Made by a program: the position numbers and the translations under genes | The notes under the pieces: generated by a model | Seen by the model: only the letters and a program-made list of their open reading frames with translations | Told to the model about the DNA's origin: nothing | Databases searched by the model: none | Part shown: in pieces, positions 2,686-33,073 of the stretch | Position numbering within the stretch: the first letter of the stretch is position 1 | Layout of the letters: every line of letters starts with the position of its first letter | Assembly: GCF_022045235.1 (NCBI RefSeq) | Contig: NW_027266343.1 | Span: 13,330,001 to 13,394,000, forward strand | Direction of reading: 5' to 3' | Source: Haliotis cracherodii | Taxonomy: Eukaryota | DNA length: 64,000 nt

Positions 2686-2693
2686 CTGTGATA
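2686..2693 (+). promoter_or_regulatory. K-box (miR-2 family 8mer) in the Cdc25 3'UTR; also at 13801-13808 +, 21875-21882 +, 25845-25852 -, 32919-32926 -
   Basis: Exact CTGTGATA shortly upstream of AATAAA in all five open copies. Confidence 0.7.
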
Positions 2694-4137
2694 CAACATT
2701 CGTACAATAAAAATAAATACTGACTTACATTTTGTTCATTTCCTTTATTTCTTTTTAATGTTCTATACAAACCCGCACAGAGCGAAATACATGATTGGAT
2801 CCAGAAACTCTACCGAATGTATCTGTTAAAGTTTAACCGGAATCCTTAATATAATGAAGGAAGGACTTTCTTTAGTCAAAACAAGGGAATCTGGTCAAAC
2901 AGTTTAACACAGGCTTCAAGTATGTCCATGATCTGATATTCAACATTCAAAGCCATAGAAAAGCTTTCAAACAGTATGATGGAAGATACGTGAAGGACAT
3001 TTCCAAATATGACACATCAGTGACAAAATCAATAACCGTTGAAAATCAATGACTTAACTGATGTTTTTGTCACTTTTATTTATATAATACAGCTGGAATT
3101 ACACTAAAACGACGAAACCCTTTCAATAATCAAAAGTCCATTGTCCAATTTCGATATTATGATCATGTATTTATGAATCATTATAAAATAGTGATGATAG
3201 CAGGTGTTCGCGAAAAGATGATTTTATCCTGCCTCTCTGGTGAAATTCTGTGTAAAGTAATAATCAGGCGCATAACAACAACAGCAGCAGCAGCAGCAAC
3301 AACAATCTTTACATTATTGTCCGTGAAGTGACATACGAGATGGTTTGTTTAGGAGCATCTTACGAGCCTGCTCTTAATAAATACGTTTTTGTATTCATGA
3401 TTTGTCACAGTTCCAAACCCTGCACATTCTGACAATTTTACTTTCCTACCATCTTAAGATGAAACACTTTAAGGTTTAACTCTAATCTTCAGAGAAGCAT
3501 TAACCCCCAACTCATCCATATGCTGAAGTCTGATACAAATTGTATATACAGACATAAATTGTGCTGAAGTAAGTGTTCAAGGTACATATAAATAAATCTA
3601 AACTGACGACCAAAAGAAACTTCAGCATTTAAAAAAATGGAATTGCAAAAAGCTTTAATTGCAAGTTTTAAGCTTGGAGGGATGTGGTCGAAAATGAGAA
3701 CCGTTTGTTGTCATAATAATTATGCGAGGTAAAGTTCTTAAAATGATGCACTAGATTTTCTTACATTTTTACAATGACACTAATTACTTTACCGTTTGAT
3801 GATTATCATAATATTTGAGTATGTGATGACCAGATTTGTATAAGTAATAATCAAAATGTCAAGCGTTTAGTAAGAAACCACAAACTGGATACCGAAAACG
3901 TATCACAAACATGTTACTATCATATCTTTACTTTATATGTAAATATCCACGCTTTCACATAAACCGTTGAGCATTATGATAAAACTGATTTGTCACTGAA
4001 AATTGAAAGAATTTGTTAAATTTGATTGTCTTTTTTAACCGTCACTAATTCCTGCAACAGTTTGTAAACATTTATCTGTGGCTTGGTGGTAATTGTGTGT
4101 AAACATGAATTGGTTCAATGAAGACTTGGGTTAGAAA

Positions 4138-4306
4138 TGAGTGAGTGAGTGAGTATGGTTTAACGCCGCTTTTAGCAATATTCCAGCAATATCACGGCGG
4201 GGGACACCAGAAATGGGCTTCACATATTGTACCCATGTCGGGAATCAAACCCGGGTCTTCAGCGTGACAAGCGAACGCTTTAACCACTAGGCTAACCGAC
4301 CGCCCC
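4138..4306 (-). mobile_element. tRNA-derived SINE family A, (CTCA)n tail; other copies ~25385-25525, 29283-29396, 34717-34870, 41033-41200, 45520-45590, 54378-54535
   Basis: A box TAGCCTAGTGG and a B-box-like element. Flanked by the direct repeat TTGGGTTAGAAATGA and absent from the paralogous site at ~16070. Confidence 0.85.
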
Positions 4307-5028
4307 TTGGGTTAGAAATGAATTTGCAACCACATGACACCTACTATGTTTGGAATGTTGTAATTATTTTTCGAAAAAAGGAAATTTATTTATTTAAAAA
4401 TATCTAAGATACCCACCAGCAGTTGTGTATGTAAAATTTTAAATCAAAATATATTTTTAGAAATACAACCATGCAGAAGTGTTCTTTGAGTGCTAACTTA
4501 CATCCAGTTCAGTAATTTCTTTTATATAATATCGACAACTTAGGATATTTTCAATTGAAGATCTGACACAATTAAGACAAAATCAATAGAGAGGTATAGT
4601 TACCTTTGCCCATCAGTCTAGATTTCATCCATCAATGCCTTTTTACACTCTTGTATCTGTAATTGGAAACGCAAGGAAGTTGTCAGTCACAGTATCAATG
4701 AGTGAGTGAGGGCATGGCGTTTCATCACACAGTAGGGTAGCAGATAAAGTAGGAGTGATTAGACAACCTCAACAGAGATTATTGATGGTGCTGTTTGAGA
4801 AGAGGTAACAAAAATAATTTGTTTCAGGAAAAAATGAATCAGTAAAAAAATATTCATTTGTGAAAAGAGATAAATCGTAAGGCTCCTCTGAGTGAGTGAG
4901 CTCTTGTATGCTTTCAATCAGGTAACGACACATATTTTGTCTCTATCTTGAACCTAAGTCCCCCGACCAGAATGTTAAATGGTAGGTTCATTAGACATGA
5001 GGACATGGAACTAGGTGCGTGTCTTGAG

Positions 5029-29559: not shown

Positions 29560-29960
29560 TTTGACATATGGAAATTGTACTTACTCGTTTCTGTTGCATG
29601 TTCCATACTATGTCTATATTATAAGAATGGTGTATACTTTGATGTAAATTATGGATCAAGATTCTGTCAGGTTATACACTCCCGTCTCAGGCTTGGCTGC
29701 AGTGATCTTAACTCCGACAAATTTGCCAGATTTATATCCGACAGCCCGAGATGTTGTGGCTTTCATACGGAAGATGTACTTAATTTCTTTCTTACGTGTC
29801 CCTTAAACAGCACATTAAAGCAATTTCGTAAAAGGCTACGATTTAAATTCAATTCTAAATTGTAATTCACATTTAACGACTGTAACAAATCTTGAAATGT
29901 TGAAATCAGTGCACAGTTTTATTCTATCTTCTTGCCGATTTAGAGATGTTGTCTGAGATG
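29560..29960 (+). mobile_element. LINE (CR1/L2-like) ORF2 3' remnant
   Basis: HSRLRLGCSDLN..SPRCCG..EDVLNFFLTCP. Confidence 0.6.
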
Positions 29961-32900
29961 TTGGCTTTGCTATATGATACTGCGATGTTGTTGTACTGGA
30001 TGTAAATAATAACGTAGCTGTAGTTACGATAATCAAGTAAATAAACACTTACAGAACAATACTTATCTTTACTGTCAATTATATAATGTATGCTATTTCT
30101 TATGTCTCTTTCAATACATTGTAATTTGTATGTGTATCATGTTTGAGAGAGGCATTCAGATAAGCAAAATTTGCTTGGTTGCCAATCCCTCCACTTTATG
30201 GAAATCAGTATATTTATATCATGTCTATTCCTGTGTAAAATATATCATATTGATAGGTTTCGTCTCGTTCGCATTGAAATATAATGATCATGTACGTTTT
30301 CCATAATGATAAGAAACCTCCATTGAGAGTCCATTGTACGATTCCGACATTTTCGTAATCCTGTGTTTATGAATCACTATCAAATAGTGATGATGGGGTT
30401 TGCGAAATTGTGAGCGTAGCCAGCTCCCCGATGGCACCGTCACAAACACATGCAAGGGCAGATCAACTTGTTTACCCAAGAAAACACGGGAACGTATGAT
30501 TCAAGTCAACAAAGGGAATTGCATAGTATCACATGAATATATATCAAAGCATATTTTAAAGGTCGGGACATCTAATCGTTGACCTGTTTTGTTTTCATAG
30601 AAAAACTAGACGGTGTTGGTAATTTGTCTCATATTAAAGCATTTTCCAAAGAAATCGAAAAAAGTATATACATTTCACCTTCACCTGACAACTATTATGT
30701 GTCAGTCCAAGTAGAATTGTTTGAACTAAGGAAGAACACTACATGTATGTCTGCAACGTTTCTATTCACAATAAAGAGTGACATACTTAATGTCATTCTA
30801 CAGGTAGGACATGATATGTTTACCTTTTTCGCGAGCACCCAGTGTCATCACTGATTTTCGGTGATCCATTCACATACTTTCCACCACTATTTTGCCTTTC
30901 AGGACTAATGGAATCGATTTCGGGGAATAATCGTTATTGTCTCATGAATTTGGAAATTAATCGCAATAACAGGCGATTTGACACGGAAGCTAATACTTCT
31001 TTTTTAGTCATTGTCAGTAGGCATATGTAAATAATTATGGGTACACTATAAGTTATAAAATGCAAAGTTGCGGATACTGCAATATTCAAAGGATGTGTGG
31101 CAATACTTTTTGTGCAGAATACACGATAGAAACCTACCAAGAGAATGTATTTCAAGTTTGGGGGATGACAGAGTGCTTGGATTCTGGCGCATAAGACTGT
31201 GACGTCATATCTTTTGCCTCACGGTGAGGAAATAATAGTGCTGTGCGGTGAAGAAGGAAACCTTTGCAAGGCTTGCTTAGTTTTCTTTAGGGGTGCCCAC
31301 ATCATGTTAGCGTACGAAGTTGCCGTGCTACATGCTTTCAATGCCTGCCATTAAATTTAATGCCCGAGTGAAGTATTACGCTGCAGAGAACAGCTTGAGC
31401 ATAAACAGCGCCATATTTTGTGTAAAAGCAGTTGTCTGTGAATCCGTGAGTCAGATTGACAACTCATTCCAAACAGTGGACTCAACTAATGTCGCTTCAC
31501 TCAGATGGACACAAACGGCTTCGCATTTCATGAAGTCATAGCTTCGCGTTCGGTTTCAAATTCAATTTGGCGCGATTAAATCTGAAGTTAATCCAGCTCT
31601 ACATTGCAAGTAGATTATGTTTATCTTCTAAATGATTATTTTATATTTTTATATTTATGAGTGTATGAGGAGGGTTGTACGTCGATGTAAGCAGTGTCAT
31701 ATCTCCAAGTATGTAATGATATGTAACTTCGTGTATAGCGGTAGGTTCAGTGAACATATAGATCACATAAGTATACTTGTCACATAATGCATTAATTATT
31801 ACTCATCTATCCTCAAGGAATAGGTCGCACATAGGGAATGTTTAATCAGACATGTCAATAGTTTTCTCTGCCCCCATAAAAGTAAAATAAAAGACTGTGT
31901 ACATTCACCTTAGTTGAATTTGTATGAATAAAAGCAGAAAAATCCTTTCTATATTTATAAGAAAACTCTGCCTAAAGCAGAGCCAATTGTACTTATCCGA
32001 CTATATCAGGAGCATGTGTTTATGAATCACTATCAAATGGTAATGATACCAGATATTCGCTGAGTGGTGACAGTCGAATCGACAAGAAGAATGTGTTACC
32101 ATTTAATGTAAAGCTTGTGGTTAGTGGCTAAAATGCTAACTATCATTCAATTACAATTGTTTTTACCGTAAATTTCATCAATTACATTTCTCATAATCTA
32201 CATTTTGTACTTTTAAAGTGTTGTAACTGGTACATGCGACAATGTAAATTTTAATGAAAAGTGTCTTGTTCATTCTTACTATTAGATACAAAATACAAAA
32301 TATTGAATTGCACATATGCCAATAAACATGATTTCCTTATTTTAGCTAATCACTGTTATATGTTAACAAATGGACAAGACTGAGGGAACAGTGAATATGT
32401 ATGCAATGTACCATATCTGGGATGAGAACTCACATTTAATGTATCCTCTGCTAATATTTTGATGAAAGTTTCTGGATGTGTCGTTATATATTCGCCTGTT
32501 ATCAACCACATGACTATAAGGTAATCGAACTTTCTTTCATGATTTAAAGTTATTGTGAACATGTGATCGGTTTTTATTTTTATTAAGTCCAAAGCAAGGT
32601 TCGTAATGTGCCATTGTTGACAGTTGACTTGCCTTTAATGTTTGCAAGTGTTTATGACGCATGTCACAGGTGTGGCAAGATATGTTAACCTTTTCACGAA
32701 CACCTGGTATCATCACTAGTTGATAGTGATTCATACACACATTTACATGATACAGTCATGAGATTATTTCACCCGGCCTTATCGATTTATAAAACCATAC
32801 AGATAAAATGTTGCGAGGCTAGGATTGTAATGGTGACAAGCAAGAGTGGAGAGATAATGACAAAGAATTGTATGTGTGGAATTTATTCACATGAAACAAT

Positions 32901-33073
32901 AATGGATTAACAAAAGAATATCACAGAATGGTTGATGACCTTAACACAGCAGGTCACAATATATAATCAGTCTTCCGCAATTATCGGCACTAGCTTCAAC
33001 AACGTCTGCAACACAGTTCAACAAGAACAAGAACAAGAACAACATGTAGTTCTTTACGTGAGCAGTTTAACTT

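What the first reader, a model, noticed from the sequence alone, without database searches (positions are those of the whole stretch)
2686..32926. Perfect K-box (miR-2 family 8mer) kept in the 3'UTR of all five open copies
Seen: CTGTGATA at 2686, 13801 and 21875 (+) and at 25845 and 32919 (-), each shortly before AATAAA. It survives across three diverged UTR types (copies 1/3, 4/5, 6), and relic A keeps TTGTGATA. Known: CUGUGAUA is the K-box, complementary to the seed of the protostome miR-2 family. Inference: selected miR-2 repression of Cdc25, a link I do not recall being described in molluscs.
Basis: partly seen in the sequence, partly recalled or inferred. Interest (0 to 1): 0.75.

Follow-up and report, generated by a model that had tools for sequence, protein, structure and literature searches.

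The report
Conserved miR-2 site in Cdc25 tails
A cluster of duplicated Cdc25 cell-division genes keeps one identical eight-letter microRNA (miR-2) docking site in otherwise scrambled 3' tails, which predicts, but does not prove, that one microRNA family turns the whole gene battery down together.

Summary
CTGTGATA lies at the five stated places, 147-158 nt after a Cdc25 stop codon and 12-31 nt before AATAAA. The raw count in the window is not significant; conservation carries the case.

The array extends beyond the window to 13 copies with four UTR types. The types are 51-73% identical, and 12 of 13 copies keep the 8-mer. On a tree of the 13 copies its eight columns show 1 change, against a mean of 7.9 for UTR windows. 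It is the only 8-mer shared by all four types. Two distant paralogs (4-fold-site difference 0.42-0.62) also carry it. Sixteen other Cdc25 loci lack it in their UTRs.

The genome encodes a miR-71 plus six-hairpin miR-2 cluster, and every mature arm starts UAUCACAG. Purifying selection on the 8-mer is well supported. Action through miR-2 is the best inference but is untested. Read evidence for the mature mRNA was inconclusive, no orthologue UTRs could be reached, and no paper found links miR-2 to Cdc25.

This is a new predicted target of a known kind of site. The scan has noted K-boxes in other 3' UTRs of this genome, but not in Cdc25.

The parts
2686..2693 (+). K-box 8-mer CTGTGATA, copy 1 3' UTR (155 nt after the stop)
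13801..13808 (+). K-box 8-mer, copy 3 3' UTR (this copy has [10 protein letters not shown], Cys to Arg)
21875..21882 (+). K-box 8-mer, copy 4 3' UTR (158 nt after the stop)
   Evidence: one contig of run X1 (RNA by guess only) lies on 21591-21885
25845..25852 (-). K-box 8-mer, copy 5 3' UTR
32919..32926 (-). K-box 8-mer, copy 6 3' UTR (147 nt after the stop)
2706..2717 (+). two overlapping-phase AATAAA signals of copy 1 (2706-2711, 2712-2717)
   Evidence: the AATAAA columns show 0 changes in 13 copies
13821..13832 (+). AATAAA signals of copy 3
21895..21900 (+). AATAAA of copy 4
25820..25825 (-). AATAAA of copy 5
32882..32887 (-). AATAAA of copy 6
798..2530 (+). Cdc25 copy 1, mapped exons N1, N2, A, B, C, D through the stop
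   Evidence: exons A and B match Cdc25A/B/C structures
11977..13645 (+). Cdc25 copy 3
19478..21716 (+). Cdc25 copy 4
26011..28297 (-). Cdc25 copy 5 (tail to tail with copy 4)
33074..35022 (-). Cdc25 copy 6
5029..5253 (-). relic A: last-exon fragment 5179-5253, TTGTGATA 5065-5072 (first letter changed), AATAAA 5029-5034
9582..10713 (+). copy 2, truncated: exons N1 (frame broken), N2, part of A, and B only; no 3' end and so no UTR to test
21844..21850 (+). second invariant UTR element TGACCTG, also at 2665, 13780, 25876 (-) and 32950 (-); 5' arm of a short hairpin; function unknown
16590..16732 (.). assembly gap, intergenic; not part of any copy or UTR

Best explanation
The 8-mer CUGUGAUA is a canonical seed site for the miR-2 family, kept by purifying selection in the short 3' UTRs (about 180-210 nt) of a tandem battery of Cdc25 genes. 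It pairs with miRNA nucleotides 2-8 and places an A opposite nucleotide 1. Shown here: the site sits at one homologous position in all 13 array copies and is exact in 12. It is far more conserved than its flanks, with sharp edges that coincide with the 8-mer. The genome encodes a miR-71 plus miR-2 cluster whose mature arms start UAUCACAG. Inferred: the site is part of the mature mRNA. Argonaute loaded with miR-2 binds it and, through the usual deadenylation, decay and translational repression route, lowers output of all array copies together. One microRNA family would then act as a common dimmer or off-switch for an amplified set of mitotic or meiotic inducers. The tissue and the time of action are unknown.
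For: (1) All five sites lie between a Cdc25 stop and an AATAAA.
(2) In the whole array (G000:C80:13.263-13.363 Mb) 12 of 13 copies have the exact 8-mer. The 13th (L013) reads CTGTGCTA at the same column.
(3) Fitch counts on a tree of the 13 copies give 1 change in the eight K-box columns. The means per 8 columns are 7.87 for the UTR (158 windows, none other at or below 1), 11.4 for the intron (170 windows, minimum 3), 16.4 beyond the AATAAA (100 windows, minimum 10) and 4.3 for the coding last exon. The three flanking columns on each side change 1, 2, 2 and 1, 2, 4 times.
(4) Among four type representatives, 41 of 134 other aligned UTR columns are invariant. The expected number of invariant 8-column windows is about 0.01. 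The invariant runs of 4 or more are TGACCTG (7), CTGTGATA (8) and AATAAA (6).
(5) Without any alignment, CTGTGATA is the only 8-mer shared by the four UTR types. Its two 7-mers are the only 7-mers still shared when L019 and L021 are added.
(6) L019 and L021 are paralogs 34 Mb away. Their 4-fold-site difference from the array is 0.42-0.62 and their UTRs are otherwise unalignable, yet both carry the exact 8-mer.
(7) The cognate miRNAs are encoded. Four hairpins pass Rfam mir-2 (53.7-71.4 bits, cut-off 45.5) and one passes mir-71 (59.6, cut-off 50). Two further hairpins carry UAUCACAG on the 3' arm.
(8) The gap from K-box to AATAAA is 12, 19, 31 or 35 nt, so the motif is not a fixed-distance part of the poly(A) signal.
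(9) A long-intron Cdc25 paralog (L056) has four 7-mer miR-2 sites in its presumed 1.98-kb UTR. Shuffles give a mean of 0.82 (P = 0.0085). It also has a miR-71 8-mer.
(10) UGUGAUA is the K box and the miR-2 family site in flies (PMC1309705, passages read). miR-2 represses the cyclin B 3' UTR in crab oocytes (PMC4092226, abstract read).
Against: There is no direct evidence that the UTR, as I drew it, is in a mature mRNA. Read laying returned contigs only. Run X1 is RNA by guess only. Its one contig over 21591-21885 differs at 7 letters and 9 gaps, and another X1 contig runs into an intron of copy 5.
No small-RNA data were examined, so expression of miR-2 and its overlap with Cdc25 expression are unknown.
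No orthologue UTRs could be reached, so all conservation evidence comes from paralogs within one genome.
There is no consistent pairing beyond the seed. The fraction of shuffled controls that pair as well ranges from 0.06 to 0.97 over 14 sites.
Predicted accessibility of the site (0.28-0.36 unpaired) is below the UTR mean (0.42-0.47).
The site is not a general Cdc25 feature. Sixteen other loci lack the 8-mer in their UTRs: L022-L025, L043, L046, L047, L049, L056 within its presumed UTR, and six sampled loci of the C3 array.
A second invariant element (TGACCTG) shows that something other than miR-2 is also conserved here.
Confidence: 0.6

Rival explanations
1. The 8-mer is selected, but another trans-acting factor reads it (an RNA-binding protein), or it serves as an auxiliary element for 3'-end formation. 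The match to the miR-2 seed would then be a coincidence.
For: The motif lies close to the AATAAA in every array copy. A second invariant element, TGACCTG, with a hairpin lies 23-31 nt upstream and matches no element I could name. There is no pairing beyond the seed, and predicted accessibility is below average.
Against: The conserved island has exactly the edges of an 8-mer seed site, including the A opposite miRNA nucleotide 1. The spacing to AATAAA varies from 12 to 35 nt. In L019 and L021 the motif lies at +206 and +40 with no AATAAA or ATTAAA within 600 nt. No UGUA.AUA, UUUUAU or UUUUAAU element occurs in 13 of 13 UTRs (these consensus motifs are recalled). A random conserved 8-mer matches the 8-mer site of a given conserved miRNA once in 65,536. 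This genome carries six or seven copies of that miRNA.
Confidence: 0.17
2. No function. The 8-mer was in the ancestral UTR and has survived by chance, helped by recent duplication and gene conversion among tandem copies.
For: The copies are paralogs in one genome and several are very recent: copies 1/3 are 97% identical and the seven type-b copies are close. The plain count in the window is not significant. One intact copy (L013) and relic A have each lost one letter.
Against: The expected number of invariant 8-column windows among the four UTR types is about 0.01. The 8-mer window has 1 change where UTR windows average 7.9. Gene conversion would homogenise the flanks as well. Two paralogs at near-saturated synonymous distance keep the motif. 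By hand, 0.5^8 is about 0.004 per lineage if the sites are homologous. If they arose independently, the chance is about 0.01 per 420-nt UTR, using the background.
Confidence: 0.13
3. The conserved letters act at the DNA level, for example as a transcription-factor site or a termination or pause element downstream of the coding region.
For: Sequence alone cannot separate DNA-level from RNA-level constraint. The motif contains a GATA core.
Against: The recalled WGATAR consensus is not met, because the next letter is C or T in all copies. The location between the stop and the AATAAA and the exact seed-site edges are what an RNA-level site predicts.
Confidence: 0.05

Closest known systems
K box (cUGUGAUa) in Drosophila E(spl)-C and Bearded 3' UTRs, the site of the miR-2/6/11/13/308 seed family
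   Same: Same 8-letter motif, same sense orientation in a 3' UTR, and retention across a cluster of duplicated genes with otherwise diverged UTRs. The K box and its link to miR-2 come from PMC1309705, where I read passages. That paper cites Lai et al. 1998, which I did not read.
   Different: The host genes here are Cdc25 phosphatases, not Notch-pathway targets. Each UTR has one site close to the poly(A) signal rather than several boxes of different kinds. No functional test exists.
miR-2 and miR-133 repression of the cyclin B 3' UTR during crab oocyte meiosis (Song et al. 2014, PMC4092226)
   Same: The same miRNA family is aimed at a component of the Cdk1 activation module in a protostome (abstract read).
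   Different: That case has reporter data and a time course, and this one has neither. The target here is the activating phosphatase, present in many copies, and the animal is an unnamed protostome rather than a crustacean. An earlier unverified scan note calls it an abalone.
Mollusc Cdc25 multigene families (seven CDC25 genes reported for the Pacific oyster; several probes up in released clam oocytes, PMC4254928)
   Same: Multiple Cdc25 genes in a mollusc, with a proposed role in meiotic resumption (passages read).
   Different: That paper says nothing about miRNA sites. The array here is larger: 13 copies at this locus, further clusters, and a separate array of more than 120 units.

Membership tests
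Canonical miR-2-family 8-mer seed site (K box) | Sequence complementary to miRNA nucleotides 2-8, with A opposite nucleotide 1 (CUGUGAUA against UAUCACAG...) | tested here: met
   Exact 8-mer at the five window sites and in 14 paralog UTRs in all. The mature arms in this genome start UAUCACAG.
Canonical miR-2-family 8-mer seed site (K box) | Cognate miRNA gene present in the same genome | tested here: met
   Four hairpins pass the Rfam RF00047 cut-off and miR-71 lies beside them. Two more hairpins fold with the seed on the 3' arm.
Canonical miR-2-family 8-mer seed site (K box) | Lies in the 3' UTR of the mature mRNA, on the sense strand | tested here: inconclusive
   The position between the stop and an invariant AATAAA fits. 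Read evidence was contigs only. One contig of a run guessed to be RNA covers the last exon and the UTR through the site.
Canonical miR-2-family 8-mer seed site (K box) | Conserved in preference to its flanks | tested here: met
   1 change against a mean of 7.87 per 8 UTR columns, and the only window at or below 1. It is the only 8-mer shared by the four UTR types. This was tested among paralogs only, not orthologues.
Canonical miR-2-family 8-mer seed site (K box) | miRNA and target expressed in the same cells or in succession | not testable with these tools
   No small-RNA data were reachable. The single read-laying run gave contigs only.
Canonical miR-2-family 8-mer seed site (K box) | Site-dependent negative regulation | not testable with these tools
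   This needs reporter or genetic experiments.
Cdc25 dual-specificity phosphatase | Rhodanese-like catalytic domain with the HCX5R loop ([10 protein letters not shown]) and similarity to solved Cdc25 domains | tested here: met
   Exon A matches Cdc25A/B/C chains at E 1.6e-16 to 2.2e-14, and exon B at 1.3e-5 and weaker. [10 protein letters not shown] is present in copies 1, 4, 5 and 6, while copy 3 reads [10 protein letters not shown].
Pumilio/PUF element (UGUANAUA) or cytoplasmic polyadenylation element (UUUUAU, UUUUAAU) | Match to the consensus near the poly(A) signal (consensus recalled, not from a call) | tested here: not met
   0 of 13 array UTRs contain TGTA.ATA, TTTTAT or TTTTAAT.

The most novel reading that the evidence does not exclude
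The miR-71/miR-2 cluster is the shared off-switch of the Cdk1-activating phosphatases in this animal. It would hit the amplified Cdc25 array through one invariant 8-mer per copy. It would hit the long-UTR Cdc25 paralog through four miR-2 7-mers and a miR-71 8-mer. Together with crab miR-2 acting on cyclin B, this would point to an old protostome link between miR-2 and M-phase entry, for example to end a maternal or meiotic Cdc25 pulse.
Probability: 0.2. Interest if true: 0.65.

Novelty: new member of a known kind. Interest (0 to 1): 0.42.

Why it matters
Cdc25 sets the timing of entry into mitosis and meiosis, and this genome carries it in extraordinary copy number. If one microRNA family reads an identical site in every copy, an amplified gene battery could be silenced in step. 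That would extend the known reach of miR-2, so far mostly Notch targets and cell-death genes in flies and cyclin B in a crab, to the Cdk1 activator in a lophotrochozoan. The prediction is concrete: one 8-mer, known coordinates and known miRNA genes. It is directly testable with reporters and 3'-end and small-RNA sequencing of oocytes and embryos.

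Tried and rejected
Counting the motif in the window does not show enrichment: 7 found, 3.14 expected, and 5 of 100 shuffles reach 7. TGTGATA gives 21 against 15.7. I dropped counts as an argument and used conservation instead.

Pfam on single exons was too weak. Rhodanese scored 19.1 bits for exon A, below its 22.2 cut-off, and the other exons gave nothing meaningful. Cdc25 identity therefore rests on matches to solved structures.

RNA evidence was inconclusive. The look-up of sequencing runs listed no holder on record as RNA. Read laying on 20900-26850 with X1, X3, X7 and X15 was dominated by repeats, namely a mariner at 23.4-24.7 kb and a SINE-like stretch at 25.28-25.87 kb. 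In X1 the bins holding exon C, exon D and the UTR of copy 4 have depth, while the intron bin 21298-21496 has none. The tool warns that holes prove nothing, and an X1 contig also enters the last intron of copy 5. No splice joint of Cdc25 appeared among the 15 joints shown (78 were not shown). No difference at the K-box letters appeared among the 40 rows shown (135 were not shown). I count this as no proof either way.

I looked for pairing beyond the seed and found none that is consistent. I looked for a conserved RNA structure that includes the site. RNAalifold pairs only a small upstream hairpin.

I tried to decide whether the sites of L019 and L021 are homologous to the array site. Local alignments score 22-26, no better than unrelated pairs. 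The best L006-L019 alignment places the L019 site opposite a decayed TCCGTGAGA upstream of the array site. The L006-L021 alignment places site on site. This stays undecided.

Literature searches: miR-2 + cdc25 + K box (swamped by miR-21 and the like). miR-2 + cdc25 as whole words gave 7 papers; I read passages of two, neither links them, and the titles and abstract starts of the other five show no link. K box + miR-2 + UGUGAU. miR-2 + mollusc + target + cell cycle. Abalone, Haliotis and miRNA. cdc25 and abalone. miR-309, twine, string and cdc25 (none of the 12 papers listed, of 53 found, holds miR-309).

Orthologue UTRs from other species could not be reached with the collections on hand.

Full report
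WHAT IS THERE. The window is G000:C80:13330001-13394000. In its first 36 kb it holds six Cdc25 loci and one relic:
- copy 1: 798-2530 (+)
- relic A: 5029-5253 (-)
- copy 2: truncated, 9582-10713 (+), with no 3' end
- copy 3: 11977-13645 (+)
- copy 4: 19478-21716 (+)
- copy 5: 26011-28297 (-)
- copy 6: 33074-35022 (-)

A Tc1/mariner ORF (23438-24427, -) lies between the tail-to-tail copies 4 and 5. Translated one by one, exon A matches solved Cdc25A/B/C catalytic domains at E 1.6e-16 to 2.2e-14. Exon B, which holds [10 protein letters not shown], matches at 1.3e-5 and weaker. The assembly gap 16590-16732 lies about 2.7 kb from the nearest gene parts on both sides and touches no copy or UTR.

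THE OBSERVATION. CTGTGATA is at the five stated places. It lies 147-158 nt after the stop and 12, 12, 12, 19 and 31 nt before AATAAA. Two other hits (50958, 60533) are unrelated. Seven hits against 3.14 expected is not significant, since 5 of 100 shuffles reach 7. The five sites are also copies of each other, so the count proves nothing by itself.

THE ARRAY IS LARGER THAN THE WINDOW. A search of the whole assembly with the last exon plus UTR of copy 4 found 21 matches. Thirteen are complete last exons in one array at C80:13.263-13.363 Mb. Three (L019, L021, L025) lie at 47.25-47.29 Mb and three (L022-L024) at 49.81-49.83 Mb. The other two are a broken last-exon piece (L020) and a 46-base fragment. 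A protein search with exon C found at least 150 matches (150 scored of 261 candidates). These include further C80 copies (L043, L046-L049) and an array of more than 120 units with a period of about 2.62 kb on C3:42.77-43.36 Mb.

The exact 8-mer is in the UTR of 12 of the 13 array copies. The 13th (L013) has CTGTGCTA at the same column. The 8-mer is also in L019 (+206) and L021 (+40). It is absent from the UTRs of L022-L025. It is absent from the whole 3.1-kb loci of L043, L046, L047, L049 and six C3 loci, on either strand. The L048 locus ends about 100 nt after its last exon, so its UTR was read from L056. There the only 8-mer lies at +2180, beyond the AATAAA at +1932 and +1977.

IS IT MORE CONSERVED THAN ITS FLANKS? 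Yes. The array has four UTR types. Outside the 8-mer, types a (copies 4, 5), c (copies 1, 3) and d (copy 6) are 51-63% identical, and c and b (the upstream array) are 73% identical. On a maximum-likelihood tree of the 13 copies (total length 1.95), Fitch parsimony gives 1 change in the eight K-box columns. The comparison values per 8 columns are:
- UTR: mean 7.87 over 158 windows. The K-box window is the only one at or below 1, and the next best (2) overlaps it.
- Last intron: mean 11.4 over 170 windows, minimum 3.
- Beyond the AATAAA: mean 16.4 over 100 windows, minimum 10.
- Coding last exon: mean 4.3.

The three columns on each side of the 8-mer change 1, 2, 2 and 1, 2, 4 times, so the island has the edges of the 8-mer. 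Among four type representatives, 41 of 134 other fully aligned UTR columns are invariant. That gives about 0.01 expected invariant 8-column windows. The only invariant runs of 4 or more are TGACCTG, CTGTGATA and AATAAA. Aligners anchor on shared words, so I repeated the test without an alignment. CTGTGATA is the only 8-mer common to the four UTR types. With L019 and L021 added, its two 7-mers are the only shared 7-mers.

DEEP PARALOGS. I pooled codon comparisons exon by exon, without building a joined sequence. The 4-fold-site difference between the array and L019 is 0.42-0.54, and between the array and L021 it is 0.49-0.62. A neighbour-joining tree puts L021 next to the array. It puts L019 next to the clade L022-L025 + L043, which lacks the site. 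The UTRs of L019 and L021 do not align with those of the array beyond short pieces, and whether their sites are homologous to the array site stays open.

Either way the retention is unlikely under neutrality. By hand, 0.5^8 is about 0.004 per lineage if the sites are homologous. If they arose independently, the chance is about 0.01 per 420-nt UTR, from the background rate. The simplest history is a site present in the common ancestor, lost once with the remodelled short UTR of the L022 clade, and hit once each in L013 and relic A.

THE miRNA. Rfam mir-2 finds four hairpins over its cut-off at G000:C2:13773730-13774250 (-), scoring 71.4, 69.2, 64.3 and 53.7 bits against 45.5. mir-71 (59.6 bits, cut-off 50) lies upstream on the same strand. 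Two more hairpins with UAUCACAG at the start of the 3' arm lie between them. All six mature arms begin UAUCACAG. The exact complement is CUGUGAUA, which pairs with nucleotides 2-8 and places A opposite nucleotide 1. The K box UGUGAUA and its assignment to the miR-2 family come from PMC1309705 (passages read).

WHAT SPEAKS AGAINST OR IS MISSING. I could not show that the 8-mer is in a mature mRNA. No listed run is on record as RNA, and the laid data were contigs. The contig details are given under Tried and rejected. In short, one X1 contig covers the last exon and UTR of copy 4 through the site, but another enters an intron of copy 5. This is suggestive at most.

I did not verify that and do not count it as support. 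Other points against or missing:
- There is no consistent pairing beyond the seed.
- No conserved structure includes the site, and predicted accessibility is somewhat below the UTR mean.
- No orthologue UTRs were reachable.
- The site is confined to one clade of this very large family.

RIVALS. A protein-binding element or an auxiliary poly(A) element would also explain the selection. However, the spacing to AATAAA varies from 12 to 35 nt. No PUF, CPE or similar consensus (recalled) is present in 13 of 13 UTRs. The exact coincidence of the island with an 8-mer seed site for a miRNA that the genome encodes six times is hard to get by chance. Chance survival with gene conversion is contradicted by the contrast with the flanks and by the distant paralogs. 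A DNA-level role cannot be excluded from sequence.

SIDE EVIDENCE. The long-intron paralog at C80:19.58 Mb (L048/L056) has a presumed 1.98-kb UTR. It holds CTGTGAT at +637 and TGTGATA at +999, +1200 and +1690. That is four sites against a shuffle mean of 0.82, and 0.85% of 2000 shuffles reach four. TGTGAT is among the 53 most frequent of 4096 6-mers there. The same UTR has a miR-71 8-mer at +90. L047 has one 7-mer site. This fits a wider link between the miR-71/miR-2 cluster and Cdc25, but the UTR limits are guesses.

KNOWN OR NEW. The kind of element is well known. I found no paper that links miR-2 to Cdc25. The nearest precedent is miR-2 and miR-133 acting on the cyclin B 3' UTR in crab oocytes (PMC4092226, abstract read). 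Multiple Cdc25 genes in bivalves and their rise in released oocytes are reported in PMC4254928 (passages read). The scan has noted K-boxes in other 3' UTRs of this genome (s1-834497, s1-837266, s1-834569), but not in Cdc25.

VERDICT. Selection on the 8-mer is well supported. miR-2 as the reader of the site is the best inference (0.6), and repression is untested. This is a new predicted target of a known kind of site. It is of moderate interest, raised somewhat by the unusual amplified target family and the clean, testable prediction.

Noticed in passing
G000:C3:42766344-43364789 (loci L050-L055 sampled): More than 120 tandem units with a period of about 2.62 kb. Each has an open Cdc25-like catalytic region ([12 protein letters not shown]), with exons A and B contiguous. 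None of the six sampled loci has the K-box.
   Followed up: partly
L001 (G000:C2:13772686-13775750), minus strand, hairpins between 13773730 and 13774990: miR-71 followed by six miR-2-family hairpins within about 1.4 kb. Rfam passes four of the miR-2 hairpins, and two more fold with UAUCACAG on the 3' arm.
   Followed up: partly
window 2665-2671, 13780-13786, 21844-21850 (+); 25876-25882, 32950-32956 (-): TGACCTG is the second invariant element of the four UTR types, 23-31 nt upstream of the K-box. It is the 5' arm of a short hairpin whose 3' arm differs between types: AGGTCA in copies 4-6 and GTCAAC in the upstream array. No function is assigned.
   Followed up: partly
L056 (G000:C80:19578900-19583900), UTR from locus position 278: A long-intron Cdc25 paralog with a presumed 1.98-kb UTR. 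It has four 7-mer miR-2 sites (P = 0.0085 by shuffles), a miR-71 8-mer at +90 and a 7-mer at +409.
   Followed up: partly
window 12897-13025 (copy 3, exon B): The catalytic loop reads [10 protein letters not shown] (Cys to Arg) in an otherwise open copy that keeps the K-box and the AATAAA.
   Followed up: partly
window 23438-24427 (-): A Tc1/mariner transposase ORF (HTH_Tnp_Tc3_2 and DDE_3) lies between the 3' ends of copies 4 and 5. It is present at high contig depth in all four laid runs.
   Followed up: no
window 25278-25874: A very high-copy SINE-like repeat lies just downstream of the poly(A) signal of copy 5, with summed contig depth up to 636,660 in the four laid runs. A similar tRNA-like insert follows the stop of L025.
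   Followed up: no
L013 (G000:C80:13272935-13276082): The only array copy with a changed K-box (CTGTGCTA). It also carries several private changes in the TGACCTG hairpin region, although its four catalytic exons are open.
   Followed up: no
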